A DNA stretch of 64,000 bases, taken from IMG/VR virus record IMGVR_UViG_3300033388_007730, positions 124,001-188,000 of that record; one strand, 5' to 3'. This document shows positions 1 through 13,655 of the stretch, in pieces. The position numbers and the translations under genes were made by a program. Under the pieces are notes generated by a model. That model was not told the origin of the DNA. It did no database searches and worked only from the letters and a program-made list of their open reading frames with translations. Numbering within the stretch: the stretch's first letter is position 1; every line of letters begins with the position of its first letter.

Positions 1-498
1 AAAGTAGATTTAACAAAAGTCTATTACCAATATAGACCTGGTGTCGATTATGATAGAATTCTTACTAACTCTCCTCACTTTGAATTAGCTCAACATTACT
101 ATAATAAGGGATTGAAATGGTTGAATGCAAATTTTAAAAATACAAAATATTTTATATTTCAAAAAGATATACTAAAAATCACTCCCTACGTTCCTGTGAA
201 GAAAATGAGGTTGTTTGACTCTTTAAAAAAGGGTTATTTAGGGAAGGGATATGAGAATGACCGTATAGTTATTTTAAATGATCCATTTATTTGTACTAGA
301 TATGCATTAAATTTGTCACTGCCTTCTCCAGAGGTTTTTATGGGGCATCATAGAGCAGGAGCGATGTTGGCTTTAGGGCAAAAAAATGTAGAAGTTATTG
401 TGGCTGTTGACGATATGATAGGAACTAAGAATTGTTATGGTAGACTCCATGATATTTATAGTTTGGAGAAGGTTCAAAAAATGAGGTATAACTTATGA
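1..498 (+). CDS. Hypothetical protein, 5'-truncated by the window edge
   Basis: Frame 1 is open from base 1 (KVDLTKVYYQYRPG...) into the listed 112..498 ORF; contains MGHHRAGAM, loosely ParB/Srx-like. Confidence 0.6.
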   Translation, partial: KVDLTKVYYQYRPGVDYDRILTNSPHFELAQHYYNKGLKWLNANFKNTKYFIFQKDILKITPYVPVKKMRLFDSLKKGYLGKGYENDRIVILNDPFICTRYALNLSLPSPEVFMGHHRAGAMLALGQKNVEVIVAVDDMIGTKNCYGRLHDIYSLEKVQKMRYNL

Positions 499-2504
499 GT
501 ATTTTGATTACAGGTATAACTGGTTTTGTGGGAAGTCATTTAGCAGATTATCTTTTGGAAGAAACAGATGATATCATTCATGGGTTAACAAGGTGGAGAT
601 CTCCAAAAGAAAATGTTTTACATCTTATAGATGATAGCTCAATTCGTTTTGAATATGGTGATTTAACAGATTTTTCATCTTTGTATAATATTATTAATCT
701 TAATCGTCCAAGAGTTATATTTCATTTAGCTGCTCAATCTTATGTTCCATATAGTTTTGATGTACCTGCTGCTACTCTTGATTCTAATGTAATAGGAACT
801 TGTAATCTACTGGAGGCTGTTAAACTTTTGAAAGACGATAAAGGATATGATCCTATTGTTCATATTTGTTCTTCATCAGAAGTTTACGGACAGGTTTCAG
901 AAGACAATGTTCCAATCACAGAAGATTGTCCTTTTGCTCCAGCTTCTCCATATGCTGTTTCTAAAGTTGGTGAGGATATGCTGGGGTTTCAGTATTGGAC
1001 ATCTTGGGGTGTAAAAACTATTAGGACTAGAATGTTTACTCATAGTGTAAGTAAATGGACTCCTGTTATTTTAAAAGATACATTAAGTGAATTGATAGAT
1101 ATAAAATATATTTCAGAAATAAGAAAAAAAGGGAAAGAAGGGGGATATTTTTCGGGAAAAATGTTAGAAGATAATACTCAAATATGGGATATGAATAGAT
1201 CTAATTTAGAAGTGTGGAATGATGAAAAATGGACAAAAATAAAACATATATCTTGTCACTCTATTAATAATTGTAAAATGTTAGAAATAATTAGTAGAGG
1301 TGGGGTTATCTGTGCTACAGATAATCATTCTATAATTGATGAAAAATCAAAAGAAATTTTAGCTTCAGATTTAAAATGTGGAGATAAGATAAAGATAACT
1401 TCTTTGCCAAATATTGAGATTACTGATATTTCAGAAGATTTAGCTTGGTTATATGGATTTTTTGTAGCTGAAGGGACAGTAACTGGAGGAAGATTAAAAA
1501 TTTCTAACAAGAATATTGATTTGTTAGAAAAATCAAAAGTTATTTTTTTAAAATATTTGGCAATTGATGGAACTATAGACCAGTATAAAGACATTTATAC
1601 TTTAAGATTAAGAAAGCCATTTTGTATAGCAAAAAGATTTTATGAAGATTGTTATGCAACTGACAAAAATAAAAAAATACCAAAAATTATTTTAAACGCT
1701 AATAAAAAATCAAAAATTTCTTTTTTACGGGGGTATAATTGTGGAGATGGAAACTTAAAAAATAATGTAAAAAGTGATTTTTATAGATTTAAAACAAAAT
1801 CTCCTATTTTAGCTATGGGATTATGTTATTTTATAGAAAGTGTTTTAAATGTAAAGTATAAAATTAATGTTGAACATAGAGATGATAAAAGATATTTTGA
1901 AATAAGATGTTTGTCTCAAAAAAATACAAAAAATGGGGAGTGGTTAAAAAAAGATAACAATGTTATTTTAAAAATAATGAAAATGGAATATGAAGATGAA
2001 GTTTGGGATTTTGAAACAGAGAATCATTGGTTCCATGCAGGTATAGGTGGGAATATTGTACATAATACTGGTCCACGTAGAGGTGATGTTTTTGTAGTAT
2101 CTGCTTTTGCTAAACAAATAGCAAAGATTGAAGTTGGATTGCAGAAGAACATTATTCACGTTGGCAATCTTGATAGTGTAAGAACTTTCGCTGATGTTAG
2201 AGATACTGTAAAAGCTTATTGGAAATTAGTTAATGAATGTGAGCCAGGAGAAGTTTATAATATTGGTGGAAATGTTACTATGACTATTGGAGAGATGCTA
2301 GATAAACTTATTGAAAAATCTACTATGGATAATATAGAGGTATTTGTAGATCCTAATCTGTTAAGACCCTCAGATGTCACACTTCAAATACCATGTACAG
2401 ATAAGTTTAAAAAAGCGACAGGTTGGGAACCAGGGATAGATTTTGACACAACATTAGAAGATACTCTTAATTTTTGGAGAGAATATTGGAGAAAAAATGG
2501 ATAA
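495..2504 (+). CDS. gmd: GDP-mannose 4,6-dehydratase-family SDR containing an intein
   Basis: TGITGFVGSHL Rossmann motif, HLAAQSYV, SSSEVYG, SPYAVSK (YxxxK), GNLDSVRTFADVRD, LLRPSDV. Confidence 0.9.
   Translation: MSILITGITGFVGSHLADYLLEETDDIIHGLTRWRSPKENVLHLIDDSSIRFEYGDLTDFSSLYNIINLNRPRVIFHLAAQSYVPYSFDVPAATLDSNVIGTCNLLEAVKLLKDDKGYDPIVHICSSSEVYGQVSEDNVPITEDCPFAPASPYAVSKVGEDMLGFQYWTSWGVKTIRTRMFTHSVSKWTPVILKDTLSELIDIKYISEIRKKGKEGGYFSGKMLEDNTQIWDMNRSNLEVWNDEKWTKIKHISCHSINNCKMLEIISRGGVICATDNHSIIDEKSKEILASDLKCGDKIKITSLPNIEITDISEDLAWLYGFFVAEGTVTGGRLKISNKNIDLLEKSKVIFLKYLAIDGTIDQYKDIYTLRLRKPFCIAKRFYEDCYATDKNKKIPKIILNANKKSKISFLRGYNCGDGNLKNNVKSDFYRFKTKSPILAMGLCYFIESVLNVKYKINVEHRDDKRYFEIRCLSQKNTKNGEWLKKDNNVILKIMKMEYEDEVWDFETENHWFHAGIGGNIVHNTGPRRGDVFVVSAFAKQIAKIEVGLQKNIIHVGNLDSVRTFADVRDTVKAYWKLVNECEPGEVYNIGGNVTMTIGEMLDKLIEKSTMDNIEVFVDPNLLRPSDVTLQIPCTDKFKKATGWEPGIDFDTTLEDTLNFWREYWRKNG
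1044..2066 (+). mobile_element. Intein (341 aa) with LAGLIDADG endonuclease in gmd
   Basis: Junctions MFTH|SVSKWTPV and NIVHN|TGPRRG; block B ATDNHS; LAWLYGFFVAEG and FLRGYNCGDG; removal restores RMFTHTGPRRG. Confidence 0.92.
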
Positions 2505-3453
2505 TTTTATAGATTTATATAAAAGAATGTATCTTATTAGAAAATCTGAAGATGTTATAATAGAATATTATTCTGAAGATGAAATGAAAACCCCTATGCA
2601 TATGTCTAAGGGATCAGAAGCTATATCGGTAGGAGTATGTTCTGCTATTAATGATGAAGATCAGGTATTTGGGACTTACAGATCTCATGCTTCATACCTG
2701 GCTAAGACAGGAGATTTGAATGGATTTTTTTCAGAAATGTATGGCAAGAAAACAGGAGCATGTGAAGGTAAATCTGGTTCTATGCACCTTTGTAATATAG
2801 ATAAAGGTTATGTATCTTCCTCTGCTATAGTCGCTAGTAATATACCAGTTGCTGTTGGCGCTGCCTTTGCTAATAAGATGAAAGGAAATGGTAAGAAGGT
2901 GGTTGTATTTTTTGGCGATGGTGCAATGGATGAAGGCATTTTTTGGGAGAGTATAAATATGGCTAGTTTGTGGTCTCTTCCAATATTGTTTGTATGTGAG
3001 GATAATAGATTAGCAGTTCATACTCATTCTAAATTTAGACAGGGTTATGAAAATATAATTGGTATTGTAGAAAATTTTAATATAATTACTGGATACAGTT
3101 TAGCAGTAGATGTGGAAGATGTTTATGATACAACAAAAACCGTTATAAGATGTATGGGAATATTTAGCGAACCAGGATTTATACAATTAGAATATTATAG
3201 ATATTTGGAACATGTCGGTATTGATTGCGATGAATATGAGGAATATAGAGAAAATGAAACTTGGAATACTAATGATGAAATAAATGATCCCGTTGTAGTA
3301 TTGAGAAAAAAATTAAAACATATTGATGTTGATGTAGAGGGTATAGAAATGGAAATAGCAAAAGATGTTTATACTGCTTTAGAGTGTGCTAAAGTTAGTA
3401 AATTTGCTCCAAATTGTGATTTATATAAGGATGTTTATTATGAGCAAAATTAA
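2497..3453 (+). CDS. TPP-dependent dehydrogenase E1 alpha-like subunit
   Basis: TYRSHA, GKSGSMH, FFGDGAMDEG TPP motif, CEDN, YRYLEHVG. Confidence 0.9.
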   Translation: MDNFIDLYKRMYLIRKSEDVIIEYYSEDEMKTPMHMSKGSEAISVGVCSAINDEDQVFGTYRSHASYLAKTGDLNGFFSEMYGKKTGACEGKSGSMHLCNIDKGYVSSSAIVASNIPVAVGAAFANKMKGNGKKVVVFFGDGAMDEGIFWESINMASLWSLPILFVCEDNRLAVHTHSKFRQGYENIIGIVENFNIITGYSLAVDVEDVYDTTKTVIRCMGIFSEPGFIQLEYYRYLEHVGIDCDEYEEYRENETWNTNDEINDPVVVLRKKLKHIDVDVEGIEMEIAKDVYTALECAKVSKFAPNCDLYKDVYYEQN

Positions 3454-4486
3454 TATGACATATGAAAGAGCTATTAATGAAGCTTTGTATCAAGAGATGG
3501 AAAGAGATGAAAACGTTTTCATATATGGGATAGGAGTTCCTGATCATAAAAAGATTTTTGGTACAACAAATAGACTGCTAGAAAAGTTTGGAAAAGATAG
3601 ATGTATAGATACGCCGTTAGCAGAAGATGGATTAACTGGATTTGCTCTAGGTGCAGCTGTTAATGGTATGAGACCAATACTAACACATATACGTGTTGAT
3701 TTTGCTCTACTATCGATTAATCAATTGTTTAATAACATTGCGGCTTATAGATATATGTCAGGAGGTCAATTAGAAGCTCCTATAGTTATTAGAATGATAA
3801 TTGGGAGAGGATGGGGGCAGGGTGCTCAACATAGTAAATCACTTCAATCTATATTTGCGCATATTCCTGGATTAAAGGTTGTTATGCCTACTACTCCAAA
3901 TGATGCTAAGGGAATGATGGCAGCAGCTATACGAGACAATAATCCAGTTATTGTATTAGAACATAGATGGCTGTATTGGCAAGAGGGAGAAGTAGAAGAA
4001 GAACCATTTATTATTCCTTTAGATAAGGCTAATAAATTAAGAGATGGAAATGATATAACTATTGTATCTACTTCATGGATGAATGTTGAGGCTATCAAGG
4101 CAGCTGATATTCTTGAGAAGAATGGCATAAGTGTAGAAATAATAGATCCACGTTGTATATCATCTATTGATATAGATCTTATTGTAGAGTCTGTTTTAAA
4201 AACAAAAAAATGTATAGTAGCTGATAATGATTGGATTTATTGTGGTTTTAGTGCTGAGTTATCGACACAGATATATGAGTGGTGCTTAGGAGATATTAAA
4301 ATCCCTATAAGGAGAATTGGATTTGCTCATACACCGTGTCCAACAGTTAGACATTTAGAAAATGAATTTTATTCTAATACTATAAATATTATAAAAGAAG
4401 TAGAGGGATTAATGGGAATAGATGAAATTGATCTTTCTGGGGAGGAATTTTATAGTCATGAGAATAAATTTAAAGGTCCATTTTGA
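3440..4486 (+). CDS. TPP-dependent dehydrogenase E1 beta-like subunit
   Basis: DTPLAEDG, GAQHSKSL, HIPGLKVVMP, NPVIVLEHR; start moved to ATG 3440, overlapping the alpha stop. Confidence 0.9.
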   Translation: MSKINMTYERAINEALYQEMERDENVFIYGIGVPDHKKIFGTTNRLLEKFGKDRCIDTPLAEDGLTGFALGAAVNGMRPILTHIRVDFALLSINQLFNNIAAYRYMSGGQLEAPIVIRMIIGRGWGQGAQHSKSLQSIFAHIPGLKVVMPTTPNDAKGMMAAAIRDNNPVIVLEHRWLYWQEGEVEEEPFIIPLDKANKLRDGNDITIVSTSWMNVEAIKAADILEKNGISVEIIDPRCISSIDIDLIVESVLKTKKCIVADNDWIYCGFSAELSTQIYEWCLGDIKIPIRRIGFAHTPCPTVRHLENEFYSNTINIIKEVEGLMGIDEIDLSGEEFYSHENKFKGPF

Positions 4487-4495
4487 GGAGATCGT

Positions 4496-5197
4496 ATGTG
4501 TTGGTTAGACAAAAAATCATTAGAGCAGATGTTGAAATTAAAAGATGAATATAATATCTCTACATTTATAGAAACGGGGGTATTTAGAGGAGTTAATATT
4601 AGGTATCATTCTTTTCACTGGGAGAAGGTTATGTCGTGTGATATATTAGATGAGTACATATCTATAGCTAAAGATTATAATAAGGATAGGGATAATGTAT
4701 CCATAGAGAAAATGTCAAGTCCTAATTTTTTGAGAAAGTTCATTAAAAAATATAATGAGCAAGGAAGAGATGATTATGTATTTTTATTCTTGGATGCTCA
4801 TTTCTATGATCCTGCTCTTTCTCCAGAAGAGAAGTGGGTAGTAGTAAATGAGATTAAAGCTCTTGAGGGATTTAATAAGGCTATTATTTGTTTGCATGAT
4901 TTTGATTGCAGCGGTTTAGGTCATTGTTGTTATGACGATCAGCCTTTGGGATTCCCCCTTGTGCTGGCAGATCTTTCAAAAGTTAATCCAAATTTTTACT
5001 ATTATGTCAACAATAAAGAAAATTGCGAGATACACGATGAGAAAAGTATATATGATGTTCCAGAGCTAATCGTAAATGAAGAAGTTCTAGATAATATTAG
5101 ATATGCTAACAGCTGTGATAGACTAAGATATAGAGGTATGTTGTATTGTACTCCAACTCCTATTGATTTAGACAAGTTTGATATTAGGAGATCATAA
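4496..5197 (+). CDS. Putative class I SAM-methyltransferase-like protein
   Basis: FIETGVFRG, FLFLDAH, ICLHDF resemble motifs I, IV and VI; lies in the sugar cluster. Confidence 0.5.
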   Translation: MCWLDKKSLEQMLKLKDEYNISTFIETGVFRGVNIRYHSFHWEKVMSCDILDEYISIAKDYNKDRDNVSIEKMSSPNFLRKFIKKYNEQGRDDYVFLFLDAHFYDPALSPEEKWVVVNEIKALEGFNKAIICLHDFDCSGLGHCCYDDQPLGFPLVLADLSKVNPNFYYYVNNKENCEIHDEKSIYDVPELIVNEEVLDNIRYANSCDRLRYRGMLYCTPTPIDLDKFDIRRS

Positions 5198-5198
5198 T

Positions 5199-5822
5199 GT
5201 GGAATTAGAACTGAGTAACAAGAGAGTTCTTGTAACTGGTGGTAGCAAAGGTATCGGCAAAGCAATTGTATCAGGATTAAAAGATGAAGGTTGTGCTGTA
5301 GATATTTGCTCCAGGACGGAAGGAATTATATTAGATGTCCTTGACAGAGACTACAAAAAGATTGATGGCAAATATGATATTTTAATAAATAATGTTGGAG
5401 GTGGCGGTAGATGGGGGGGCGATAATTATGAAGAATTTGATGAATGGGATGATATCTATGAGAAAAATGCAGGAGCAGCTAGAAAATTAACAATGAAATG
5501 TCTCCCGTATATGAAAGAAAAGTGGTGGGGAAGAGTTGTCACAATCTCTTCAATTTTTGGCAAAGAAGCAGGAGGCAGACCGTGGTTTAATATGGCGAAA
5601 GCAGCAGAAATAAGTTTAATGAAAAATCTAGCTGGAAAATATGAAGGTATTACTTTTAATACAGTTGCTCCAGGATATATAGATATTGGAGCTAAAGGAT
5701 TTATAGGATCTGGCAAACCAGATGATGTTGCTAATATAGTGGTTTTTTTATGCTCTGACAAGGCTAAGCATATAAATGGTGCGTGTATTACGGTAGATGG
5801 TGGCGAAAGTAGAAGTTTTTAA
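5199..5822 (+). CDS. Short-chain dehydrogenase/reductase
   Basis: VTGGSKGIG, NNVGG, FNMAK (Phe in place of the catalytic Tyr), VAPG, ITVDGG; GTG start after AGGAG. Confidence 0.85.
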   Translation: MELELSNKRVLVTGGSKGIGKAIVSGLKDEGCAVDICSRTEGIILDVLDRDYKKIDGKYDILINNVGGGGRWGGDNYEEFDEWDDIYEKNAGAARKLTMKCLPYMKEKWWGRVVTISSIFGKEAGGRPWFNMAKAAEISLMKNLAGKYEGITFNTVAPGYIDIGAKGFIGSGKPDDVANIVVFLCSDKAKHINGACITVDGGESRSF

Positions 5823-6828: not shown

Positions 6829-8199
6829 ATGGATGTATTGTTTGTAATTCATAAAATAGAGTATGGTGATCTAATAGCTTTAAGTTATTTGTCATCTATA
6901 GCTAAAGTGAGGGGATTTAAAACACATTTATGTATTTTAAATACAAATAACATATTCGAAATGATGGATACAATATCTCCTTGTGTTGTGGCTTATTCTG
7001 CTAATATAGAGAATTTTGCTATTTTAGTTGATGCTAACAAAAGCATTAAAGATAAGTATGATTTTACATCTATAATGGGTGGTCCTCAACCAACTTTTAA
7101 ACCAGATTTATTTCAAGAAAGCTCTGTTGATGTATTTTGTGTAGGTGAAGGAGAGTTGGTTTTTGGTGATTTTCTAGACGCTTTGAAAAATAATTTGCCA
7201 TTTGATAATATAGACAATTTAATTACTAAAAATGGAGCTAATCCCGTCAGGCATTTGATTAAAAATTTGGATGATTTGCCTTTTCCTGATAGAGATCTGA
7301 CTTTGAGTAACTCTTATTTGAAGGAAGTTTCAAAAAAGTCATTCTATACTACCAGAGGATGTCCATTTACATGCTCTTATTGTTGCAATAGTTATTATAA
7401 AAAATTATATAAGGGTAAGGGTAAAGCAATAAGAAGATTTTCTGTTGATAGAATTATAAGTGAAATGAAATTTGTTAAAGATAGATATAGAATGGATTTT
7501 ATAAAAATTGGCGATGATTTATTTACTTCAAAGGCAGACGATTGGCTTAAAGAATTTGCAGAAAGGTATTCTAGAGAGATAAACTTACCTTTTAATTGTT
7601 ATTTAAGATTAGATATGATAGATGATGATTTGCTAATTTTATTGAAGAAGGCAGGATGTTATTCTGTTCATCTTTCTGTAGACAGTGTTTCCAAAAAAGT
7701 AAGAGAAGAAGTTTTCAATAGGAAGTGGAGAGAAGTTAATATAGAAGAAAATTTGAAGATGATTCATAGTTATGGGATTAATACTTGGGTTAATTTTATG
7801 CTGTCTGCTCCGGAGTCTACTTTAAATGATGATTTAGAATCTATTAGATTGAGTAGGAGGACAGGAATAACATATACTGCTTATAGCACAACTATTCCAA
7901 TACAAAATACTAAATTATTTGATTACTGCGTTGATACAGGATGTATTGATGAAAAATATAATGGTGAGATAGGAGATAGTTGGGGGGTCTCGCCTTTAAA
8001 TTGTTTTTCAGAAAAAGAAAAAGATATAAGATACAATATTTTTTGTTTGGGTGCTATTGCTGCCAAGATGCCCATACCTATTTATAAATTTTTATTATTT
8101 ATTATAAAACACTTTCCGTCAAATCGTTTGTTCAAAAAAATTCATGATAGATATCTAAAATATTCGATAAAAAATAATATATTTAAAATAGAGAGATAG
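6829..8199 (+). CDS. B12-binding radical SAM protein
   Basis: GGPQPT and GEGE cobalamin-domain motifs, LPFPDR, RGCPFTCSYC (CxxxCxxC). Confidence 0.9.
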   Translation: MDVLFVIHKIEYGDLIALSYLSSIAKVRGFKTHLCILNTNNIFEMMDTISPCVVAYSANIENFAILVDANKSIKDKYDFTSIMGGPQPTFKPDLFQESSVDVFCVGEGELVFGDFLDALKNNLPFDNIDNLITKNGANPVRHLIKNLDDLPFPDRDLTLSNSYLKEVSKKSFYTTRGCPFTCSYCCNSYYKKLYKGKGKAIRRFSVDRIISEMKFVKDRYRMDFIKIGDDLFTSKADDWLKEFAERYSREINLPFNCYLRLDMIDDDLLILLKKAGCYSVHLSVDSVSKKVREEVFNRKWREVNIEENLKMIHSYGINTWVNFMLSAPESTLNDDLESIRLSRRTGITYTAYSTTIPIQNTKLFDYCVDTGCIDEKYNGEIGDSWGVSPLNCFSEKEKDIRYNIFCLGAIAAKMPIPIYKFLLFIIKHFPSNRLFKKIHDRYLKYSIKNNIFKIER

Positions 8200-8203
8200 A
8201 AAA

Positions 8204-8737
8204 ATGCAGGTAGAAACAACAAAGTTGAAAAATGTTCTTTTATTCATCCACGAATGTTATGAAGATCACAGGGGAACTTACGAAGAGATTTATAACCAAG
8301 AAAAATTTGACAAAATATGTGAAGAGTATATTGGTCATATAATTGAATTTAAAGAAGATAATATAGCAGTATCCTCTAAACATGTGCTTAGAGGGTTGCA
8401 TGGAGACAATAGGACTTGGAAATATGTTACTTGTTTGAAAGGTAAATATTTTATTAATGTGTTGTGTTATGATTATGACTCTGAATTTTTTGGACAATAC
8501 CAGAGTTTTGTTTTAAGTGAACAGAATAAAAGTCAACTTCTTATTCCTCCTTTTCATGGTCATGGATATGTTGTTATGAGTGATGAGGCAATTTTCCATT
8601 ACAAACAATCTTGTATATATAAAGGTATGAAAGAGCAATTCACAATAAAGTATAATGATGATAGGTTTAACATGTGGTGGCCTATAAAAAATCCTATTTT
8701 ATCAAAAAGAGACGAGACAGGGATGCTAATAGTATAA
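8204..8737 (+). CDS. rmlC: dTDP-4-dehydrorhamnose 3,5-epimerase-family cupin
   Basis: DHRG, VLRGLH, IPPFHGHG, WPIKNPILSKRD. Confidence 0.88.
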   Translation: MQVETTKLKNVLLFIHECYEDHRGTYEEIYNQEKFDKICEEYIGHIIEFKEDNIAVSSKHVLRGLHGDNRTWKYVTCLKGKYFINVLCYDYDSEFFGQYQSFVLSEQNKSQLLIPPFHGHGYVVMSDEAIFHYKQSCIYKGMKEQFTIKYNDDRFNMWWPIKNPILSKRDETGMLIV

Positions 8738-8765
8738 AAGATATTTTTTAATAAGGAGTTATTTT

Positions 8766-9689
8766 ATGAGTTTGTTAAATTTTACAGTTTTCCATGTTGG
8801 GGGCAGGGGGGGGATAGGTGAAGCTAATAGGGTTTTACAGCTTTCCAGAAATAAAAAAAATAAATTTAAGTTGTATGTTTTTGAAGCCGATCTTAATGAC
8901 GAATCATCAGATGAAGAAAATAAAAAATTTATAAGGAAGGTGAAAAAAAGGAATGATGTTGATGCGGAAGTTTTAGAGTATTGTATACATGATCATAATG
9001 GAGAGGAAGATTTCTATATTAATGTAGATCCAAGATCAAGTAGTCTATTTAAGATGTCTCCTGGTATAGTCAATTATAGTTTTCCTAAAATGGGAGAGCC
9101 TATGTGGAAAAATCATGGTGCGGTTGATGAGATTAAAAAAGTTAAAGTAAGTACTTTTGATTCTATTCGAGAGAATGGTCTAGATGTCGTTCCAGATCTT
9201 CTAAGTATGGACGCTCAAGGATCGGAACTATCTATTATGAAAGGTAGTAGTCATATATTTGATAATGATTGCTTGGCGGTTTGCACTGAGGTAGAGTTTA
9301 GGGAGATTTATAAAAAACAACCATTATTTTCTGATCAAGATTCTTTTTTAAGAAAAAATGGTTTTATATTTGCTAATTTCCATACTGTTCAGGAGTGGTT
9401 CCCTTCAAAGTTGATGATAGGAAAGCCCTTTTACACAGTCGGAGAGGTAACGTTTTTGAAAGATTATGTATATCTAATGGATAAATATAAAAATGATTTA
9501 GAAACGTTGATACCATTAATGTTTAAATTGGCAGTAATATCGAAAGCTTTATTTTACACTTCTTATACTTTTATTGTATTAGATTCTTTGTATGAGATGA
9601 ATACGAAGGCATATAAATTGTTTGTTAAAAATAGTTCTGATAAAATAGTAATTGATGTAGATAAATTTTATAAGGAGAATTTAAAATAA
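8766..9689 (+). CDS. FkbM-family methyltransferase
   Basis: HVGGRGG, FEAD, MDAQGSEL, EVEFREIYKKQPLFSDQD. Confidence 0.8.
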   Translation: MSLLNFTVFHVGGRGGIGEANRVLQLSRNKKNKFKLYVFEADLNDESSDEENKKFIRKVKKRNDVDAEVLEYCIHDHNGEEDFYINVDPRSSSLFKMSPGIVNYSFPKMGEPMWKNHGAVDEIKKVKVSTFDSIRENGLDVVPDLLSMDAQGSELSIMKGSSHIFDNDCLAVCTEVEFREIYKKQPLFSDQDSFLRKNGFIFANFHTVQEWFPSKLMIGKPFYTVGEVTFLKDYVYLMDKYKNDLETLIPLMFKLAVISKALFYTSYTFIVLDSLYEMNTKAYKLFVKNSSDKIVIDVDKFYKENLK

Positions 9690-10660
9690 TGAGTTTTTAT
9701 AAAGATAAAAATGTTTTAGTTACAGGAGCAGCAGGTTTTACTGGAACTAACTTAATTAAAAGATTATTAGAAGAAGGTGCAAATGTTAGAGGAGTATTAC
9801 ACAGAAAAAGTCCACGAGTTGATTTTGATTATGATAGGATAAATTATATATGGGCAGATCTAACACATAAAGATGCTTGTGCAGAAGTTGTAAAAGATAT
9901 TGATTATGTTTTTATGTGTGCTGCTAATACCTCCGGTGCTGCTGTGATGGAAAAAACACCTTTAACTCATGTAACTCCCAATGTAATAATGAATTCTCTT
10001 ATGCTTGAAGCTGCTAATAAGGCTGGAGTAAAGAAATTTTTATTCATGAGTAGCACAACAGTTTATCCAATTTCTGAAGAGTCTTTAAAAGAGGATGATG
10101 TTAATGATGAATTTTTTGAGAAGTATTATTGTGTTGGATGGATGAAAAGATTCTCTGAAGTCATGTGTGAGATGTATTCAACGAAGATTAAAGAACCTAT
10201 GACGACAATTGTTGTAAGACCAGGTAATCTTTATGGTGATTTTGATGATTATGAGTGGGACACTTCTCATTCTACAGCGGCGTTAATAAGAAGAGTAGTA
10301 GAGAGGCATGATCCATTAGTTGTATGGGGAGATGGAAGTGATTTAAAGGATATCACATATATATCTGATTTAATTGATGGTATGATGTCTGCCATGGAAA
10401 AAATTGATAACTTTGAAATTATTAATATAGCTAGCGGAAAGTCGTATAGTATTAAAGAAACTTTAAATATGATTTTAGAAATTGATGGATATATAGATGC
10501 AAAAGTTGAATATGATTTAACTAAACCAACTATGATCTCAAAAAGATTGATAGATATAAGTAAAGCACAAAAATTATTAAATTTTGAACCTAAGCACGAT
10601 CTTAGGTTAGGAATAGAAAAAACTATTAAATATTATAAGGAGAAAGATAATAATGGTTAA
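9689..10660 (+). CDS. NAD-dependent epimerase/reductase (GDP-L-fucose synthase-like), second copy
   Basis: TGAAGFTG, GWMKR, RPGNLYG, WGDGSD. Confidence 0.85.
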   Translation: MSFYKDKNVLVTGAAGFTGTNLIKRLLEEGANVRGVLHRKSPRVDFDYDRINYIWADLTHKDACAEVVKDIDYVFMCAANTSGAAVMEKTPLTHVTPNVIMNSLMLEAANKAGVKKFLFMSSTTVYPISEESLKEDDVNDEFFEKYYCVGWMKRFSEVMCEMYSTKIKEPMTTIVVRPGNLYGDFDDYEWDTSHSTAALIRRVVERHDPLVVWGDGSDLKDITYISDLIDGMMSAMEKIDNFEIINIASGKSYSIKETLNMILEIDGYIDAKVEYDLTKPTMISKRLIDISKAQKLLNFEPKHDLRLGIEKTIKYYKEKDNNG

Positions 10661-11354
10661 GTTTAGCATTATAGGACCAGCTATAAAATCTCATTTATAC
10701 TCTCGTTTCTACCAGGGGCTAAATAAAAATAACACCAATTTTGAAGTTGTGTTTGTGGGAAATAAACCACTTACAGAATCAATGCCAGATAATTTTATTT
10801 ACATATATTCAGAAAGTTCTCCTGCGTGTTGTCTTGAAATAGCAGCTAGAAAAGCTCAAGGAGAGTATTTGATGATATCTCCTGATGATTATACTTTTTC
10901 AAATAATTTTTTAGATAATTTTAAAAAATATTTAGATTCATGTAGTGATGAAAAGATGATGATTGCAGGAAAATATAAAAGAGGAGGAGATATGAAGGAC
11001 GAATGGCTGGTTTTTGATCAGAAGATTAAAGGATCATCTCCGATAGGTCAATGCACAACATTAAAAAGAGAAGAATGGTTAAAGTTGGGTGGAATAGACA
11101 GAAGGTTTGAACATGGGTGTTGTGATATGGATATGATTATGAGGATGTATGAAATTGGTTATAAACTTCATATAGAGAAGAATACGTGGGTAGAAGAGGA
11201 TGTTATTAAGGATAAAAAAATAAGGAGAAAACGTCTGTGGAAAAAAACGGGCAAAGCCAGAAGAGCATTATTGAATTCTTTGTGGGTTAAGAATGGCAAA
11301 ATGTCCAAAAAAAGACTGGGCAAATTATATCCTTTTTCAGAAGATATAGTATGA
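10653..11354 (+). CDS. Glycosyltransferase family 2-like
   Basis: AQGEYLMISPDD, LGGIDRRF, CDMD. Confidence 0.7.
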   Translation: MVKFSIIGPAIKSHLYSRFYQGLNKNNTNFEVVFVGNKPLTESMPDNFIYIYSESSPACCLEIAARKAQGEYLMISPDDYTFSNNFLDNFKKYLDSCSDEKMMIAGKYKRGGDMKDEWLVFDQKIKGSSPIGQCTTLKREEWLKLGGIDRRFEHGCCDMDMIMRMYEIGYKLHIEKNTWVEEDVIKDKKIRRKRLWKKTGKARRALLNSLWVKNGKMSKKRLGKLYPFSEDIV

Positions 11355-11421
11355 AAAAAATATACTGGGATATGCTTAATAAAAAAATTGAATAATTTTT
11401 AAGAAAATAAAAGGAGACAAG

Positions 11422-11865
11422 ATGAGTAGACAATGGCAATATAATTTTTCAGAATTAATAGATAGATTAAGCATTCATCAGTTAAAAGAAGTATTTATTC
11501 CGGAGCAAAAAGAAAAATATTCTAATGATATGGATCTGATTGCTAGTGATTTAACTGAAATTGTGAAAGAAAAAAATATAGAGTTATCAGGTGAGATGAT
11601 AAGAGCTATAATTGTCATAGCTCAAATGAATACTCATATTTGGTATAATGAATCTAAAGCTAGGAGTGGAGAAGATCAAGATGTCAATTTGTTGAAGCTT
11701 ACACATGGAATAAATGGAATTAGAAATAGAGTAGGAAATTGCATATTAGAGATGATTGGTGACATTGATAAATTTGATTGGAAGACAGACTGTTTAGCAG
11801 CTGAGTTTAAGGATTGGGAAATAAGTTTATTTAAGAAAAATAAGGAGAATAAAGATGAAGAATAA
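11422..11865 (+). CDS. Hypothetical helical protein
   Basis: Good RBS (AGGAG); ELIDRLSI motif of small proteins seen in sugar clusters. Confidence 0.6.
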   Translation: MSRQWQYNFSELIDRLSIHQLKEVFIPEQKEKYSNDMDLIASDLTEIVKEKNIELSGEMIRAIIVIAQMNTHIWYNESKARSGEDQDVNLLKLTHGINGIRNRVGNCILEMIGDIDKFDWKTDCLAAEFKDWEISLFKKNKENKDEE

Positions 11866-12823
11866 AAAATATAGTTGTTTTATTGGAAGATGGCAACCAT
11901 TTCACAAGGGACATGATTATATCATAAAACAGGCATTGAATAAAGGTAAATCAGTATGGATAGCCGTTAGAGACACTCCGGTAACAGACTGGGACCCTTA
12001 TACCACACAAGAGCGTTTTGAAATGATAAGTGCTCATTATAAGAATGAAGATGTGATTGTTAGTATTGTTCCTGATATTGAATCGGTTAATATAGGAAGA
12101 AAAGTTGGTTATGAAGTTAACCGTTATGATGCTCCAGAAGATATAGAGGGTGTTTCTGCTACTCAGATTAGAAAAATGATGTCAGAAGGAGATTCTTCGT
12201 GGAAAGAAAAAGTTCCTAAACTCATTGCTGATTATTTAATAAGTAAAGGTAATTTGTCTCTTGCAACAGAGCAAGGAATGGTTATATGGTTCACAGGTTT
12301 ATCAGGAGCAGGAAAGAGCACAGTAGCAAATGCTCTTCTACCTGTATTAGGAAATAAGGGTAGAGGAGTCAAAATACTTGATGGAGATGAGGTAAGAAGA
12401 AACATAACATCTGATTTAGGATTTTCAAAAGAAGATCGTTCAGAGAATATAAAGAGAATTAGTTTTGTAGCTAAATCAATTGCTGATGTAGGTGGGATAG
12501 CTATTGTAGCAGCTATATCTCCATATGAAGAAGACAGAGAAAAAGCTAGATATTTAATTGGAGAGGATAGATTTTTTGAAGTTCATGCTGATTGTCACAT
12601 GGATATTTTGGTAGAAAGAGATGTCAAAGGATTATACAAAAAAGCTATTGCTGGAGAGATTCTTAATTTTACTGGTATTTCAGATCCATATGAAGCTCCT
12701 AAAAATCCTAATTGTACAGTCCATAGCGACTATATGTCTGTTTCTGAATCTGTTAACAAAATATTAAAAAAGGTAGAAGAGTTTCTAAATAAACCAAAAG
12801 AAGGAATGATGTTTTATATATAA
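11855..12823 (+). CDS. cysC: HxGH nucleotidyltransferase fused to adenylylsulfate (APS) kinase
   Basis: N-terminal GRWQPFHKGH and SATQIR; C-terminal WFTGLSGAGKST, LDGDEVR, RDVKGLY, FTGISDPYEAP. Confidence 0.9.
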   Translation: MKNKKYSCFIGRWQPFHKGHDYIIKQALNKGKSVWIAVRDTPVTDWDPYTTQERFEMISAHYKNEDVIVSIVPDIESVNIGRKVGYEVNRYDAPEDIEGVSATQIRKMMSEGDSSWKEKVPKLIADYLISKGNLSLATEQGMVIWFTGLSGAGKSTVANALLPVLGNKGRGVKILDGDEVRRNITSDLGFSKEDRSENIKRISFVAKSIADVGGIAIVAAISPYEEDREKARYLIGEDRFFEVHADCHMDILVERDVKGLYKKAIAGEILNFTGISDPYEAPKNPNCTVHSDYMSVSESVNKILKKVEEFLNKPKEGMMFYI

Positions 12824-12833
12824 TAGAGATTAG

Positions 12834-13655
12834 ATGCATTTCAATAGAAAAAAAACACCGCAAAAGAAGAGACTTAAGATACGCCCTAATACTATTGATA
12901 AGAGAAGTCCTACTGATGATGTGAAGCATATACCAAGAGTCAGAAACTCTAGAGTAAAAAAGAAGAAGTCTATTTCACATGATGTAATAATATCAAAGAG
13001 TATTAATAATAGCAAATATAAGAATATGTCGGAGTGGAAGGGCATTGTTGAAAATCAACCAGCATTTATTCTTGGTAATGCTCCTAGCATATTATCCAGA
13101 AATTTACATTTGTTGAATGATTATTTTACTATAGGTGTGAATAGAATTTTTTATATTTATGATCCAACAATTTTAATTTGGCAAGATCAAGAAGTATGGA
13201 TTAAAGATAAGAAAAAAATAATGAAACAAAAATCTATAAAGGTTTGTAGAGATAGAAGTGATCCTAGACAAAAATTTATAAATTTTGAATTGAATATGGG
13301 AAAATTTAAGTTTAATAGTAATCCTGGCAAGTTGCATGGAAGAGGAAATACAGGAGTTTTAGCAATACAGTTGGCAGTTTCTATGGGGTGCTCTTGTGTA
13401 GTTTTATTGGGGATGGATTGCCGATATGAAGGAAGAAGTAGAACTGATTTTTATGGGAAGAATAAAGATCATAAACATTATACATTAAAAATGTGCAAAA
13501 ATGCGATGAATTGGGTAGAAGGAAAATGTCCTGTTCCAATATATAATTGTGGTAATTCTGATGCATGGCCTAGAAGAGAGTTGGAAGATGTCATTGAAGA
13601 ATTAAATCCTCTAAAATTAGGAAGAAATTATTATTTGAGTGTGTTGGGAAAATGA
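12834..13655 (+). CDS. DUF115/MptE/Maf-like protein
   Basis: AFILGNAPS, TIGVNR, AIQLAVSMG, LLGMDC. Confidence 0.65.
   Translation: MHFNRKKTPQKKRLKIRPNTIDKRSPTDDVKHIPRVRNSRVKKKKSISHDVIISKSINNSKYKNMSEWKGIVENQPAFILGNAPSILSRNLHLLNDYFTIGVNRIFYIYDPTILIWQDQEVWIKDKKKIMKQKSIKVCRDRSDPRQKFINFELNMGKFKFNSNPGKLHGRGNTGVLAIQLAVSMGCSCVVLLGMDCRYEGRSRTDFYGKNKDHKHYTLKMCKNAMNWVEGKCPVPIYNCGNSDAWPRRELEDVIEELNPLKLGRNYYLSVLGK

What the first reader, a model, noticed from the sequence alone, without database searches (positions are those of the whole stretch)
495..13655. Large phage-borne pathway for a branched, methylated and possibly sulfated nucleotide sugar
Seen: a contiguous, largely coupled cluster of gmd, TPP E1 alpha and beta with no E2 or E3, a putative methyltransferase, an SDR, two fucose-synthase-like enzymes, a B12 radical SAM, RmlC, FkbM, GT2, an HxGH-CysC fusion and a DUF115/Maf-like protein. 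Known: E1-like pairs in sugar clusters (AviB1/AviB2 in avilamycin; YerE is the single-chain analogue) add a two-carbon branch to NDP-4-keto-6-deoxysugars; B12 radical SAMs often methylate; CysC makes PAPS. Inference: the cluster builds an unusual glycan for virion decoration, host-surface conversion or DNA hypermodification.
Basis: partly seen in the sequence, partly recalled or inferred. Interest (0 to 1): 0.68.

Follow-up and report, generated by a model that had tools for sequence, protein, structure and literature searches.

The report
Huge-phage branched-sugar glycan island
A very large uncultured phage carries a roughly 40-kb block of soluble sugar-building enzymes whose last third probably makes a carbon-branched, methylated deoxy-sugar using a pyruvate-dehydrogenase-like enzyme pair that has lost its usual partners; the same cassette is widespread in uncultured bacteria.

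Summary
The gene list is real and tightly coupled, at the stated coordinates. Corrections: FkbM precedes the second fucose-synthase-like gene, and a 147-aa ORF was missed.

The stretch is only the 3' third of a glycan island of at least 39 kb in a 219-kb virus record (CheckV 44% complete). The island holds 12 glycosyltransferase genes, 7 methyltransferases, two NeuB/CMP-transferase pairs and two MptE/Maf-like proteins.

The E1 pair has intact TPP and catalytic residues. It falls below NCBIfam's PDH cut-offs and has no E2 or lipoyl partner in the record. It sits in a well-supported clade of sugar-cluster E1 alpha, separate from E2-linked and annotated AcoA copies. The core (Gmd-like dehydratase, E1ab, fucose-synthase-like SDRs, RmlC) recurs in 7 other viral contigs and in many bacterial and archaeal MAGs. 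A two-carbon branching role is therefore well supported by inference, but not shown.

The "HxGH" domain is NMNAT-like, not an ATP sulfurylase. The kinase domain is a bona fide APS kinase. Relatives of the fusion sit beside sulfotransferases, but none is visible in this record, so sulfation stays open.

The "B12" radical SAM could equally be an AprD4-like deoxygenase. The short SDR lacks the catalytic Tyr. No membrane, export or DNA-hydroxylation genes were found, so I favour cytoplasmic protein (virion) glycosylation.

The parts
1..498 (+). 3' part of a 184-aa ORF (record 123944-124498) with no family hit; the last gene before the dehydratase
   Evidence: ORF; no Pfam hit; 36-49% identical ORFs in L004 and L008
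495..2504 (+). Gmd-like NDP-hexose 4,6-dehydratase, 669 aa, interrupted by an intein
   Evidence: Pfam GDP_Man_Dehyd 4.7e-72, in two stretches. The alignment with intein-free 328-aa orthologues is 92-93% identical to the L004 copy. That orthologue scores 179 bits against a cut-off of 415 for TIGR01472.
1044..2066 (+). 341-residue class-1 intein with a LAGLIDADG homing endonuclease (residues 184-524), inserted in the conserved ..FTH|TGPRRG.. motif
   Evidence: It begins with Ser, ends with His-Asn, and the +1 residue is Thr. It is absent from the orthologues in L004, L006 and L005. Pfam LAGLIDADG_3 and Intein_splicing hits.
2497..3453 (+). ThDP-dependent E1 alpha subunit of the sugar-cluster (alpha-KADH2-like) clade
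   Evidence: Pfam E1_dh 1.5e-47. 240 bits against a 394 cut-off for PDH_E1_alph_y. The GDG...N ThDP motif and the catalytic His are kept. Tree placement.
3440..4486 (+). E1 beta subunit. The start is probably the ATG at 3440, which follows an AAGGA; the listed ORF starts at a GTG at 3386.
   Evidence: Transket_pyr + Transketolase_C. 306 bits against a 321 cut-off. The conserved His in the QHS motif is kept. Sequence read.
4496..5197 (+). Putative class I SAM methyltransferase (Methyltransf_24/CmcI-like), 233 aa
   Evidence: No Pfam or NCBIfam hit. The nearest named clusters by language-model features are class I and CmcI methyltransferases, scoring 0.93-0.95. ETGxxxG and FLDAHF motifs are present. 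Orthologues occur in L004, L006, L009, L010 and L065.
5178..5822 (+). Shortened classical SDR with the catalytic Tyr replaced by Phe
   Evidence: adh_short_C2 5.6e-26. TGGSKGIGK and NNVG motifs are present, but Phe stands at the Tyr position in all four orthologues.
5837..6826 (+). Extended SDR, GDP-fucose-synthase-like; the gene most tightly linked to the E1 pair
   Evidence: NCBIfam GDPFucSynFcl 168 bits (cut-off 500). Best PDB hits are GDP-L-fucose synthases, 8e-34. 60-86% identical orthologues lie next to E1 in many loci.
6829..8199 (+). Radical SAM enzyme with an N-terminal B12-binding-like domain; either a C-methylase or an AprD4-like diol dehydratase
   Evidence: Radical_SAM 4.8e-16; B12-binding 28.2 bits, below the 32.1 cut-off. 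NCBIfam hits are spread over many B12-rSAM families. The best PDB hit is AprD4 6fd2 at 2.4e-12, ahead of TokK, OxsB and CysS.
8204..8737 (+). RmlC-like NDP-4-keto-6-deoxyhexose 3,5-epimerase
   Evidence: Pfam dTDP_sugar_isom 1.4e-37; TIGR01221 116.6 bits against a 155.75 cut-off
8766..9689 (+). FkbM-family methyltransferase
   Evidence: Methyltransf_21 9.2e-14
9689..10660 (+). Second GDP-fucose-synthase-like extended SDR
   Evidence: GDPFucSynFcl 131.6 bits (cut-off 500); orthologues
10653..11354 (+). GT-A fold glycosyltransferase of a family that travels with the cassette
   Evidence: Only a weak Pfam hit. The AF2 model has pLDDT 93.9. Foldseek matches: a Leptospira GT, the WrtF fucosyltransferase and the RmlT rhamnosyltransferase, TM 0.6-0.66. 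Tandem paralogues occur in L009 and L010, and the family is fused to E1 alpha in L008.
11422..11865 (+). 147-aa helical protein of unknown function, conserved in phage and bacterial versions of the cassette
   Evidence: No family hit. Homologues in L006, L008, L034, L051, L055, L058 and L063. 65% identical to the 142-aa ORF in L126.
11855..12823 (+). Fusion of an NMNAT-like HxGH adenylyltransferase (residues about 1-135) with an APS kinase (about 138-310)
   Evidence: APS_kinase 1.9e-59. TIGR00455 219 bits, above the 138.7 cut-off. The N-domain matches the NMNAT-like protein MJ0541 (1f9a) and solved archaeal NMNATs, with both signature motifs. The kinase is 59% identical to the PAPS-synthase kinase domain.
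12834..13655 (+). MptE-like/DUF115 protein with a sialyltransferase/Maf-type fold
   Evidence: Pfam 34.1 bits against a 34.6 cut-off. AF2 pLDDT 85.8. Foldseek matches: M. jannaschii HPPK, CstII, Maf 5mu5 and ST8SiaIII, probability 1.0, TM 0.34-0.46.
13652..15373 (+). Conserved backbone downstream (83-aa ORF, 155-aa ORF, RlaP nucleotidyltransferase), marking the right-hand end of the island
   Evidence: Pfam RlaP. The same order (fusion, MptE-like, two small ORFs, RlaP) is seen in related contigs.

Best explanation
The stretch is the 3' third of a glycan-biosynthesis island of at least 39 kb in a huge phage with a T4-like replication module.

Proposed chemistry of the cassette (inferred, not shown):
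- After protein splicing, the Gmd-like dehydratase turns an NDP-hexose (most likely GDP-mannose taken from the host) into an NDP-4-keto-6-deoxyhexose.
- The E1 alpha/beta pair works without E2 or E3. It decarboxylates pyruvate on ThDP and adds the resulting two-carbon acyl-anion to the sugar's keto carbon, giving a C-acetyl branched tertiary alcohol.
- The RmlC-like epimerase, the two fucose-synthase-like SDRs, the atypical SDR, two methyltransferases and the radical SAM enzyme tailor this sugar, and probably make an unbranched 6-deoxyhexose as a side product.
- GT-A transferases of the co-travelling family attach it.

The two last genes belong to a conserved right-hand end of the island. The NMNAT-like/APS-kinase fusion supplies PAPS. 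The MptE/Maf-like enzyme transfers the CMP-activated nonulosonic acid made by NeuB and cytidylyltransferase genes further upstream.

Every island protein is soluble, and the record has no flippase, polymerase, ABC exporter or initiating phosphoglycosyltransferase. The glycan is therefore most likely assembled in the cytoplasm on a protein acceptor, probably a virion protein.

What is shown: gene content, domain identities, conserved residues, synteny and phylogeny. What is inferred: every chemical step, the substrate nucleotide and the acceptor.
For: Gene families.

Intein: canonical boundaries, and absent from orthologues.

E1 pair:
- The ThDP motif and both catalytic His residues are conserved.
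- It scores below the PDH equivalog/subfamily cut-offs.
- No E2 or lipoyl domain occurs in the 219-kb record.
- No E2 was found by tblastn in 88 homologous loci (1.39 Mb), while positive controls cross-hit at 1e-39.
- In the tree, E2-adjacent paralogues from five bacterial genomes and an annotated acoA (whose neighbours are acoB, E2, E3 and lipA) fall outside a 99% SH-aLRT clade of 95 sugar-cluster E1 alpha. All 8 viral rows lie in a 100%-supported subclade of it.

Synteny:
- All 7 other viral loci carry the Gmd-like gene, E1 beta and the 329-aa SDR.
- In 23 of 44 loci the Gmd-like gene ends within 100 bp of the E1 alpha start.
- Of 36 bacterial or archaeal loci in the subclade with at least 5 kb on both sides, 36 have E1 beta, 16 the Gmd-like gene, 16 the 329-aa SDR and 14 RmlC.
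- In an Omnitrophota MAG the cassette lies in a Wzm/Wzt-type polysaccharide locus.

Literature: alpha/beta ThDP enzymes of the alpha-KADH2 superfamily install C2 branches at C3 or C4 of keto sugars, and KbDH was shown to do so in vitro (PMC12247030; PMC4753412).

Other parts:
- The GT-A fold resembles fucosyl- and rhamnosyltransferases.
- Upstream island content.
- No polytopic membrane protein, Bac_transf, Wzx or Wzm.
- APS kinase identity.
- The fusion lies next to Sulfotransfer_1 and Sulfotransfer_2 in a bacterial glycan locus, and next to TauE and Sulfotransfer_2 in a related contig.
- The two domains occur in both orders.
Against: - No enzyme was assayed.
- The characterised branching enzymes (AviB1/2, Pau11/12, KbDH) could not be fetched, so grouping with them is untested.
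- The dehydratase is below the gmd equivalog cut-off, with near-equal scores to LegB and RmlB models, so the nucleotide is uncertain.
- The SDR expected to reduce the acetyl branch has Phe in place of the catalytic Tyr.
- After a C4 branch is added there is no 4-keto group left for two fucose-synthase-like reductases. Part of the cassette must therefore do something else.
- The radical SAM enzyme may deoxygenate rather than methylate.
- No sulfotransferase is seen in the record.
- The fusion occurs in phages without sugar genes nearby.
- The record is estimated to be only 44% complete, so every absence is provisional.
- The acceptor is inferred only from absences.
Confidence: 0.6

Rival explanations
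1. The glycan is not for the virion. The phage makes nucleotide sugars and oligosaccharides that are built on host undecaprenyl-phosphate and exported by host machinery. This would remodel the infected cell's surface, for example for superinfection exclusion or receptor masking.
For: In bacteria the homologous cassette sits in an export-type polysaccharide locus with ABC2_membrane and ABC_tran genes. In another it sits in a locus with rhamnose genes and sulfotransferases. The phage record is only 44% complete, so membrane components could lie in the missing part.
Against: No polytopic membrane protein, initiating phosphoglycosyltransferase, Wzx or Wzm occurs in 219 kb. Twelve soluble GT genes plus two Maf/sialyltransferase-fold proteins are present; from my own knowledge, the known Maf acceptors are proteins. 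Related phage contigs show the same soluble-only make-up.
Confidence: 0.25
2. The E1 pair does ThDP chemistry on a sugar, but not C2 branching from pyruvate. It might use a longer or hydroxylated 2-oxo acid donor, as the ErwE and caryophyllose enzymes do. It might act on a 3-keto intermediate. Or it might cleave rather than form an acyloin. The SDR, RmlC and SDR genes would then simply make fucose-, rhamnose- or talose-like 6-deoxyhexoses.
For: The trio of dehydratase, RmlC and fucose-synthase-like reductase is by itself a complete 6-deoxyhexose pathway. L006 carries an extra split transketolase pair beside the E1 pair. The review notes branching at C3 as well as C4, and long-chain donors in YerE-like enzymes.
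Against: The same review states that alpha-KADH2 enzymes appear specialised for C2 branches from pyruvate. The E1 pair is adjacent to the 4,6-dehydratase in most close loci.
Confidence: 0.2
3. The NMNAT-like/APS-kinase fusion is not part of the sugar pathway. It could be a general sulfur-assimilation or nucleotide-cofactor auxiliary gene that merely abuts the island. Its N-domain could make something other than APS.
For: In L119 and L120 the fusion lies among translation and nucleotide genes with no sugar cluster. The N-domain matches NMN adenylyltransferases, not ATP sulfurylase. No sulfotransferase is found in this record.
Against: In five other contexts it sits at the 3' end of a glycan cassette. 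In two contexts it is near sulfotransferases, and in one of these also next to a TauE permease. The kinase domain passes the APS-kinase equivalog-domain cut-off and is 59% identical to PAPS-synthase kinase domains.
Confidence: 0.2
4. The E1 pair is an ordinary pyruvate or acetoin dehydrogenase E1 that works with host E2 and E3 to redirect central metabolism.
For: The best family names are PDH E1 alpha and beta. The catalytic His residues are conserved.
Against: It scores below the curated cut-offs. It is separated from E2-linked and AcoA sequences by 99%-supported branches. No E2 lies near any of 88 homologues. It is embedded in sugar genes in phages, CPR bacteria and archaea.
Confidence: 0.04
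5. The glycosyltransferases hypermodify the phage DNA with a glycan.
For: Phage GTs are known to put mono- to trisaccharides on 5hmC or 5hoC in DNA (bioRxiv 10.1101/2023.12.21.572611; PMC13326640).
Against: The record has no thymidylate-synthase homologue and no TET/JBP hit, although the TET control was uninformative. The scale and content of the island (12 GT genes, nonulosonic acid genes, a Maf-like fold) fit protein or polysaccharide glycans better.
Confidence: 0.04

Closest known systems
alpha-KADH2-type sugar C-branching enzymes of actinomycete antibiotic pathways (AviB1/AviB2 of avilamycin, Pau11/Pau12 of paulomycin, the aldgamycin enzyme, KbDH-alpha/beta of kibdelomycin)
   Same: A two-subunit E1-like ThDP enzyme without E2 or E3, encoded next to an NDP-hexose 4,6-dehydratase and tailoring SDRs and methyltransferases. 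The proposed reaction is the same: a pyruvate-derived C2 unit is added to a keto sugar, and the branch is then reduced or methylated.
   Different: Here the enzyme is in a phage and in glycan (not antibiotic) loci of uncultured Planctomycetota, Omnitrophota, Chloroflexota, CPR bacteria and archaea. It is paired with a Gmd-like dehydratase rather than an RmlB-type one. Sequence grouping with the characterised enzymes was not tested, and no product is known.
YerE/YerF of yersiniose biosynthesis and other YerE-like enzymes (ErwE, MMAR_2332)
   Same: They add a branch to a 4-keto-deoxy NDP-sugar destined for a cell-surface polysaccharide, and a ketoreduction follows.
   Different: YerE is a single-chain enzyme of the decarboxylase (AHAS-like) superfamily acting on CDP sugars. 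It is analogous to the E1 pair here, not homologous.
Virus-encoded glycosylation machineries (chlorovirus and mimivirus glycan clusters; mycobacteriophage capsid glycosylation)
   Same: Soluble viral GTs and nucleotide-sugar enzymes, including Gmd-type dehydratases, build glycans on virion proteins without host membrane pathways. This rests on my own knowledge; mycobacteriophage GTs are linked to capsid glycosylation in PMC11256854.
   Different: Those phage cases involve two or so GTs. This island has 12 GT genes, nonulosonic acid genes, a branching E1 pair and a PAPS-related fusion. No glycan or acceptor has been observed.
Bifunctional PAPS synthases (Sat-CysC, CysN-CysC, animal PAPSS)
   Same: A nucleotidyltransferase-superfamily domain is fused to an APS kinase. 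The kinase domain is 59% identical to the PAPS-synthase one, and both domain orders exist, as in PAPS synthases.
   Different: The partner domain is a 135-residue NMNAT-like module, not the PUA + ATP-sulfurylase unit of about 390 residues. It scores below the ATP-sulfurylase cut-off, and hhalign aligns only the kinase.
Maf flagellin nonulosonic-acid transferases and GT42 sialyltransferases (CstII)
   Same: The fold matches Maf 5mu5 and CstII, and the island encodes NeuB-type synthases and CMP-transferases.
   Different: The protein is much shorter than Maf (273 aa against more than 600). TM-scores are only 0.34-0.46, and the archaeal pterin pyrophosphokinase MptE matches equally well.
AprD4/AprD3 radical deoxygenation of aminoglycoside sugars
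   Same: The radical SAM enzyme has the same length as AprD4, which is its best solved match, and it lies beside SDR reductases (the function of AprD4 is from my own knowledge).
   Different: Only 50 bits over the radical SAM core. NCBIfam scores for several B12-dependent methylase and lipid families are higher.

Membership tests
Sugar C-branching alpha-KADH2 (E1 alpha/beta-like ThDP carboligase) | Separate alpha and beta subunits with an intact ThDP-binding motif and catalytic residues | tested here: met
   Pfam E1_dh, Transket_pyr and Transketolase_C. The GDG...N motif, the alpha His and the beta His are conserved in alignments to human and Geobacillus E1.
Sugar C-branching alpha-KADH2 (E1 alpha/beta-like ThDP carboligase) | No E2, E3 or lipoyl partner; encoded beside an NDP-hexose 4,6-dehydratase and sugar-tailoring genes | tested here: met
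   No PF00198 or PF00364 hit in the record. No E2 in 88 homologous loci. The dehydratase is adjacent in all viral and most close bacterial loci.
Sugar C-branching alpha-KADH2 (E1 alpha/beta-like ThDP carboligase) | Phylogenetic grouping with the characterised enzymes (AviB1, Pau11, KbDH-alpha) | not tested
Only separation from E2-linked E1s and from AcoA was shown.
Sugar C-branching alpha-KADH2 (E1 alpha/beta-like ThDP carboligase) | Carboligation of pyruvate-derived hydroxyethyl-ThDP to a keto sugar | not testable with these tools
   Needs an enzyme assay.
Pyruvate or acetoin dehydrogenase E1 (true 2-oxo acid dehydrogenase complex) | Reaches the curated NCBIfam cut-offs for PDH E1 alpha and beta | tested here: not met
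   Alpha: 240.2 bits against 393.85. Beta: 306 against 321 and 293.8 against 454.
Pyruvate or acetoin dehydrogenase E1 (true 2-oxo acid dehydrogenase complex) | Clusters with E2-linked E1 alpha in a tree, with E2 and E3 in the genome | tested here: not met
   It lies outside the E2-linked/AcoA group, across a 99% SH-aLRT branch. No E2 or lipoyl domain in the record. The record is incomplete.
GDP-mannose 4,6-dehydratase (TIGR01472) | Equivalog score cut-off | tested here: not met
   The 92%-identical intein-free orthologue scores 179.3 bits against a 415 cut-off. LegB (155) and RmlB (153) score close behind. The Pfam GDP_Man_Dehyd family hit is strong.
Class 1 intein with homing endonuclease | Nucleophile at residue 1, C-terminal His-Asn, nucleophilic +1 residue, insertion in a conserved host motif, endonuclease domain | tested here: met
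   Ser1, His-Asn, +1 Thr; clean 341-residue insertion relative to three orthologues; LAGLIDADG_3 hit. Splicing itself was not tested.
APS kinase (CysC) | Equivalog-domain cut-off and the P-loop and APS-binding motifs | tested here: met
   TIGR00455 219.1 bits against 138.7. 59% identity over 174 columns to PAPS-synthase kinase domains, with the signature motifs aligned. Best PDB hits are APS kinases at 5e-46.
ATP sulfurylase (PF01747) | Family score cut-off for the N-terminal domain | tested here: not met
   18.1 and 13.8 bits against a 24.3 cut-off. Best matches are the NMNAT-like protein MJ0541 (1f9a) and solved archaeal NMN adenylyltransferases. hhalign gives no alignment to the sulfurylase domain.
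PAPS-dependent glycan sulfation system | A sulfotransferase encoded with the PAPS-forming enzyme | tested here: not met
   No Sulfotransfer_1, _2 or _3 hit, though the _2 control was uninformative. No 5'-PSB-like motif. No tblastn hit with the two sulfotransferases of L125. The feature is met in relatives.
Cobalamin-dependent radical SAM methyltransferase | Radical SAM core plus a B12-binding domain above threshold; closest relatives are methylases | tested here: inconclusive
   Radical_SAM passes; B12-binding scores 28.2 against 32.1. NCBIfam hits are spread over lipid, RiPP, P-methylase and AprD4 models, all far below cut-off. The best solved relative is AprD4.
Maf/GT42-type nonulosonic acid transferase | MptE-like (DUF115) domain and sialyltransferase-like fold, with CMP-nonulosonate genes in the locus | tested here: inconclusive
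   Pfam 34.1 against 34.6. Fold matches to CstII, Maf and ST8SiaIII, but equally to MptE HPPK, TM 0.34-0.46. NeuB and CTP_transf_3 genes lie upstream.
Classical SDR ketoreductase | Ser-Tyr-Lys catalytic triad | tested here: not met
   Phe stands at the Tyr position in the window protein and in three orthologues. Ser, Lys and the cofactor motifs are present.

The most novel reading that the evidence does not exclude
The 135-residue NMNAT-like domain fused to the APS kinase is a new, minimal kind of sulfate adenylyltransferase. The 320-residue fusion would then be the smallest known PAPS synthase. It would be used by huge phages and some bacteria to sulfate glycans that also carry a C-branched deoxy-sugar and nonulosonic acids on virion proteins.
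Probability: 0.3. Interest if true: 0.75.

Novelty: new variant of a known kind. Interest (0 to 1): 0.62.

Why it matters
If the reading holds, three things follow.

1. ThDP-dependent C2 branching of sugars by E1-like pairs has so far been tied to actinomycete antibiotics. It would turn out to be a widespread trait of cell-surface glycans in uncultured phyla (Planctomycetota, Omnitrophota, Chloroflexota, CPR bacteria, DPANN archaea). That points to an undescribed branched 6-deoxy-sugar in the environment.

2. Huge phages would carry glycan factories on the scale of giant eukaryotic viruses. Here that means 12 glycosyltransferase genes, 7 methyltransferases, two nonulosonic acid routes and a PAPS-related enzyme, all soluble. 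This would make virion glycosylation in phages a much broader question than the mycobacteriophage cases.

3. The NMNAT-like/APS-kinase fusion is a testable candidate for a new sulfate-activating enzyme.

The cassette is compact and intein-free in relatives, so it can be reconstituted directly.

Tried and rejected
- Megablast of the 13 kb against GenBank phages gave no match. tblastn of E1 alpha against the same collection found only 31%-identical acoA genes in Acinetobacter 'phage' bins. These turned out to be full acetoin dehydrogenase operons and were used as an outgroup.
- PHROGs on seven large ORFs at the left end of the record gave nothing, so no candidate glycoprotein could be named.
- My first idea was that the fusion is the C. 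jejuni Cj1416/Cj1415 phosphoramidate pair. I did not pursue it further: the N-domain is NMNAT-like, and the kinase is closest to true APS kinases and sits beside sulfotransferases in relatives. It is not excluded biochemically.
- I considered the MptE-like protein as a hidden sulfotransferase. Its fold is MptE/sialyltransferase-like, not a sulfotransferase fold.
- The conserved E1 His residues do not distinguish a lipoyl acceptor from a sugar acceptor.
- The language-model atlas gave no lead for the 147-aa ORF beyond viral hypotheticals.
- No tRNA gene occurs in the window.
- The large representative-protein search and complex prediction were not used, because no claim rested on them.
- No alternative genetic code was needed.

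Full report
**Setting**

The window is bases 124001-188000 of a 219,188-bp IMG/VR virus record that CheckV rates 44% complete, which implies a genome near 0.5 Mb. G+C is about 31%, GC skew is strong, and almost all genes lie on one strand.

PHROG hits support a huge tailed phage with a T4-like replication module:
- a clamp loader;
- DnaB-like and other helicases;
- a DNA polymerase split over three ORFs, a UvsX-like recombinase and an Rnl1-like RNA ligase.

No close relative exists among GenBank phages.

**Observation**

Junctions are overlaps or short gaps, 12 of 13 at 28 nt or less.

- FkbM (8766-9689) precedes the second fucose-synthase-like SDR (9689-10660).
- A 147-aa ORF (11422-11865) was missed.
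- E1 beta most likely starts at the ATG at 3440.

The 669-aa "gmd" is a 328-aa dehydratase carrying a 341-residue intein. The intein starts with Ser1, ends with His-Asn, is followed by a +1 Thr, and holds a LAGLIDADG endonuclease. It is inserted in a strictly conserved motif and is absent from orthologues up to 92-93% identical.

**The stretch is the end of a much larger island**

Upstream, in record coordinates, the same strand carries:
- a fused GT4+GT2 (98512);
- a CMP-type cytidylyltransferase (100449);
- a NeuB-family synthase with a cupin tail (101132);
- a TylF/Methyltransf_24 enzyme;
- ten more GT genes (GT2 or GT4), a second MptE-like gene and four more class I methyltransferases;
- as outliers, a second NeuB, a second cytidylyltransferase and a KdsC/KDN-9-P-phosphatase-like HAD at 89.9-94.7 kb.

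From 98.5 to 137.7 kb I count 12 GT genes, 7 methyltransferases and two MptE-like proteins.

A hydropathy scan finds no protein with more than four predicted membrane segments anywhere in the record, and none of the few multi-segment ORFs exceeds 230 aa. Island proteins have at most one weak segment. Searches for Bac_transf, Wzx-type and ABC2_membrane families are negative while their controls ring. The record also has no NTP_transferase, so the starting nucleotide sugar must come from the host or from the missing part of the genome.

**The E1 pair**

Sequence features:
- Alpha and beta keep the ThDP motif and the two catalytic histidines of PDH and BCKDH E1. Decarboxylation of a 2-oxo acid on ThDP is therefore expected.
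- They fall below NCBIfam's cut-offs for PDH E1: alpha 240 against 394 bits, beta 306 against 321.

Missing partners:
- The record has no E2 catalytic domain and no lipoyl domain.

Distribution:
- A word search found 2705 relatives at E ≤ 1e-10. The closest, at 57-82% identity, lie on contigs of up to 387 kb.
- Seven other viral or virus-like loci carry the pair, on contigs of up to 548 kb.
The best 80 come from Planctomycetota, Omnitrophota, Chloroflexota, Desulfobacterota, Acidobacteriota, many CPR lineages, Nanoarchaeota and Thermoplasmata.

Synteny:
- All 7 viral loci have the Gmd-like gene, E1 beta and the 329-aa fucose-synthase-like SDR.
- Of 36 bacterial or archaeal loci of the close subclade with at least 5 kb on both sides, all have E1 beta, 16 the Gmd-like gene, 16 the 329-aa SDR, 14 RmlC and 13 the second SDR.
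- In 23 of 44 loci the dehydratase gene ends within 100 bp of E1 alpha.
- In an Omnitrophota MAG the cassette is part of a Wzm/Wzt polysaccharide locus.
- tblastn with two bona fide E2 proteins finds nothing in these 88 loci (1.39 Mb) or in the phage record, although the two controls detect each other at 1e-39.

Phylogeny:
- The tree has 105 rows and was built with IQ-TREE under LG+G4, with SH-aLRT support from a quick search.
- Housekeeping E1 alpha paralogues taken from five of the same bacterial genomes lie outside a 99%-supported clade of 95 sugar-cluster sequences. These include copies adjacent to E2 and an annotated acoA whose neighbours are acoB, E2, E3 and lipA.
- All eight viral rows lie in a 100%-supported subclade.
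- The window groups with four other viral or virus-like rows at 98%.

The characterised branching enzymes could not be fetched, so their position is untested.

Literature:
- Alpha/beta ThDP enzymes of the alpha-KADH2 superfamily install C2 branches at C3 or C4 of keto sugars in aldgamycin, avilamycin, paulomycin, kosinostatin and kibdelomycin.
- KbDH was shown to do this in vitro, and about 120 gene clusters are known.
- The known polysaccharide cases use the unrelated single-chain YerE type (PMC12247030; PMC4753412).

**Tailoring genes, with caveats**

- The 233-aa protein without a Pfam hit is probably a Methyltransf_24/CmcI-like methyltransferase.
- The dehydratase is Gmd-like but far below the gmd equivalog cut-off. 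LegB and RmlB models score nearly as well, so GDP-mannose is only the best guess.
- Both extended SDRs are closest to GDP-fucose synthase.
- The short classical SDR, which the branching model would use to reduce the acetyl branch, has Phe at the catalytic Tyr position. So do its phage and bacterial orthologues. A related phage has an aldo-keto reductase at the head of the cassette instead, the family of the paulomycin branch reductase Pau7.
- The radical SAM enzyme's B12-binding hit is below threshold. Its best solved relative is AprD4 (457 aa, 2.4e-12), ahead of the methylases TokK and CysS and of OxsB. Methylation and radical deoxygenation are about equally likely. The enzyme is an accessory part of the cassette, present at over 50% identity in only about six loci.
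- The weak "GT2" is a confident GT-A model (pLDDT 93.9). It is closest to a Leptospira GT, the GDP-fucose-dependent WrtF and the TDP-rhamnose-dependent RmlT. Its family travels with the cassette, is amplified to 7-8 tandem copies in two viral loci, and is fused in frame to E1 alpha in L008.

**The last two genes**

The fusion:
- Its kinase half passes the APS-kinase equivalog-domain cut-off (219 against 139 bits). It is 59% identical to the kinase domain of PAPS synthases.
- Its N-terminal 135 residues carry both signature motifs of archaeal NMN adenylyltransferases. They do not reach the ATP-sulfurylase threshold or align to that domain.
- The architecture is a family of dozens of distinct 90%-identity clusters among the 120 best hits listed. 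One member has the domains in the opposite order, which argues that the two halves act in one pathway.

Its contexts:
- In five related contigs the fusion sits at the 3' end of a glycan cassette. It is usually preceded by a PNK3P-type phosphatase and, where the contig reaches that far, followed by the same MptE-like gene, two small ORFs and RlaP. The cassettes themselves differ.
- One of these contigs adds a TauE permease and a Sulfotransfer_2.
- In a bacterial contig it lies between rhamnose genes and Sulfotransfer_2 and Sulfotransfer_1 genes.
- In two other phage contigs it has no sugar neighbours.

In this record I find:
- no sulfotransferase by three Pfam families, a motif scan, or tblastn with the L125 enzymes;
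- no PAPS reductase.

Sulfation is thus plausible for the lineage but unproven here.

The MptE-like protein folds (pLDDT 85.8) like the MptE pyrophosphokinase, CstII, Maf and ST8SiaIII, not like a sulfotransferase. With NeuB and CMP-transferase genes upstream, a nonulosonic-acid transferase is the best reading.

**Function of the glycan**

DNA hypermodification lacks its usual entry enzymes: there is no ThyA homologue and no TET/JBP hit, although the TET control was silent. Export-type polysaccharide synthesis lacks every membrane component. The remaining and preferred reading is cytoplasmic glycosylation of proteins, probably virion proteins. This rests on absences in a record estimated at 44% complete and has no direct support.

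**Verdict**

The cassette is a new variant of a known kind: E1-like sugar branching, now phage-borne and widespread in uncultured prokaryotes. The fusion is a candidate for new enzymology.

Noticed in passing
record 89.9-124 kb (loci L003:5879-20000 and L002:1-20000), upstream of the window: The island continues upstream. It holds two NeuB-family synthases (one fused to a cupin), two CMP-type cytidylyltransferases, a KdsC/KDN-9-P-phosphatase-like HAD, a fused GT4+GT2 of 645 aa, ten further GT genes, a second MptE-like gene and five methyltransferases. Peptide deformylase, NADAR, DUF1257 and an AmmeMemoRadiSam-like radical SAM gene are interspersed.
   Followed up: partly
L008:9110-10936 (IMGVR_UViG_3300033145_003233, 548 kb): In this huge-phage contig a GT-A domain of the cassette's glycosyltransferase family is fused in frame to E1 alpha, giving one 608-aa ORF. 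This links the transferase family directly to the branching enzyme.
   Followed up: partly
L009:12704-20082 and L010:13095-20683: Seven to eight tandem paralogues of the same small GT-A family follow the E1 cassette in two viral contigs.
   Followed up: no
L120:8001-8936: A relative of the fusion has the opposite domain order, with the APS kinase first and the NMNAT-like domain second. It lies among tRNA synthetase, EF-Ts and NADAR genes rather than sugar genes.
   Followed up: partly
window 5178-5822: The classical SDR of the cassette has Phe instead of the catalytic Tyr, conserved in phage and Omnitrophota orthologues. It also lacks about 40 residues relative to FabG-type enzymes.
   Followed up: partly
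window 22942-25647: The clamp-loader (DNA pol III gamma/tau-like) gene of 901 aa carries a second LAGLIDADG intein (Intein_splicing and LAGLIDADG_3 hits).
   Followed up: no
window 57196-59568: A 790-aa ORF combines a papain-family protease domain with a LAGLIDADG domain. Its N-terminal region hits unrelated PHROG families in the manner of an intein, so it is probably a third intein.
   Followed up: no
window 41395-42861: A phage-encoded PAS-domain histidine kinase (PAS, HisKA, HATPase_c) of 488 aa.
   Followed up: no
window 32922-35588 and 14483-16518: RNA-related genes sit next to the island: an 888-aa CCA-adding/poly(A) polymerase-like enzyme with an HD domain, an RlaP nucleotidyltransferase and an OGFr_N-domain protein. 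Relatives place a PNK3P 3'-phosphatase directly before the fusion.
   Followed up: no
record 66666-71152 (L016:6666-11152): The family B-type DNA polymerase (phrog_405) is split over three consecutive ORFs of 466, 349 and 466 aa.
   Followed up: no
L006:7380-9196: One virus-like contig has an additional split transketolase-like pair between the dehydratase and the E1 pair. This suggests a second ThDP-dependent C2 transfer in that version of the cassette.
   Followed up: no
L053 (Gemmatimonadota), L046, L059, L060: Several bacterial loci carry two different sugar-cluster E1 alpha genes within 10 kb of each other.
   Followed up: no
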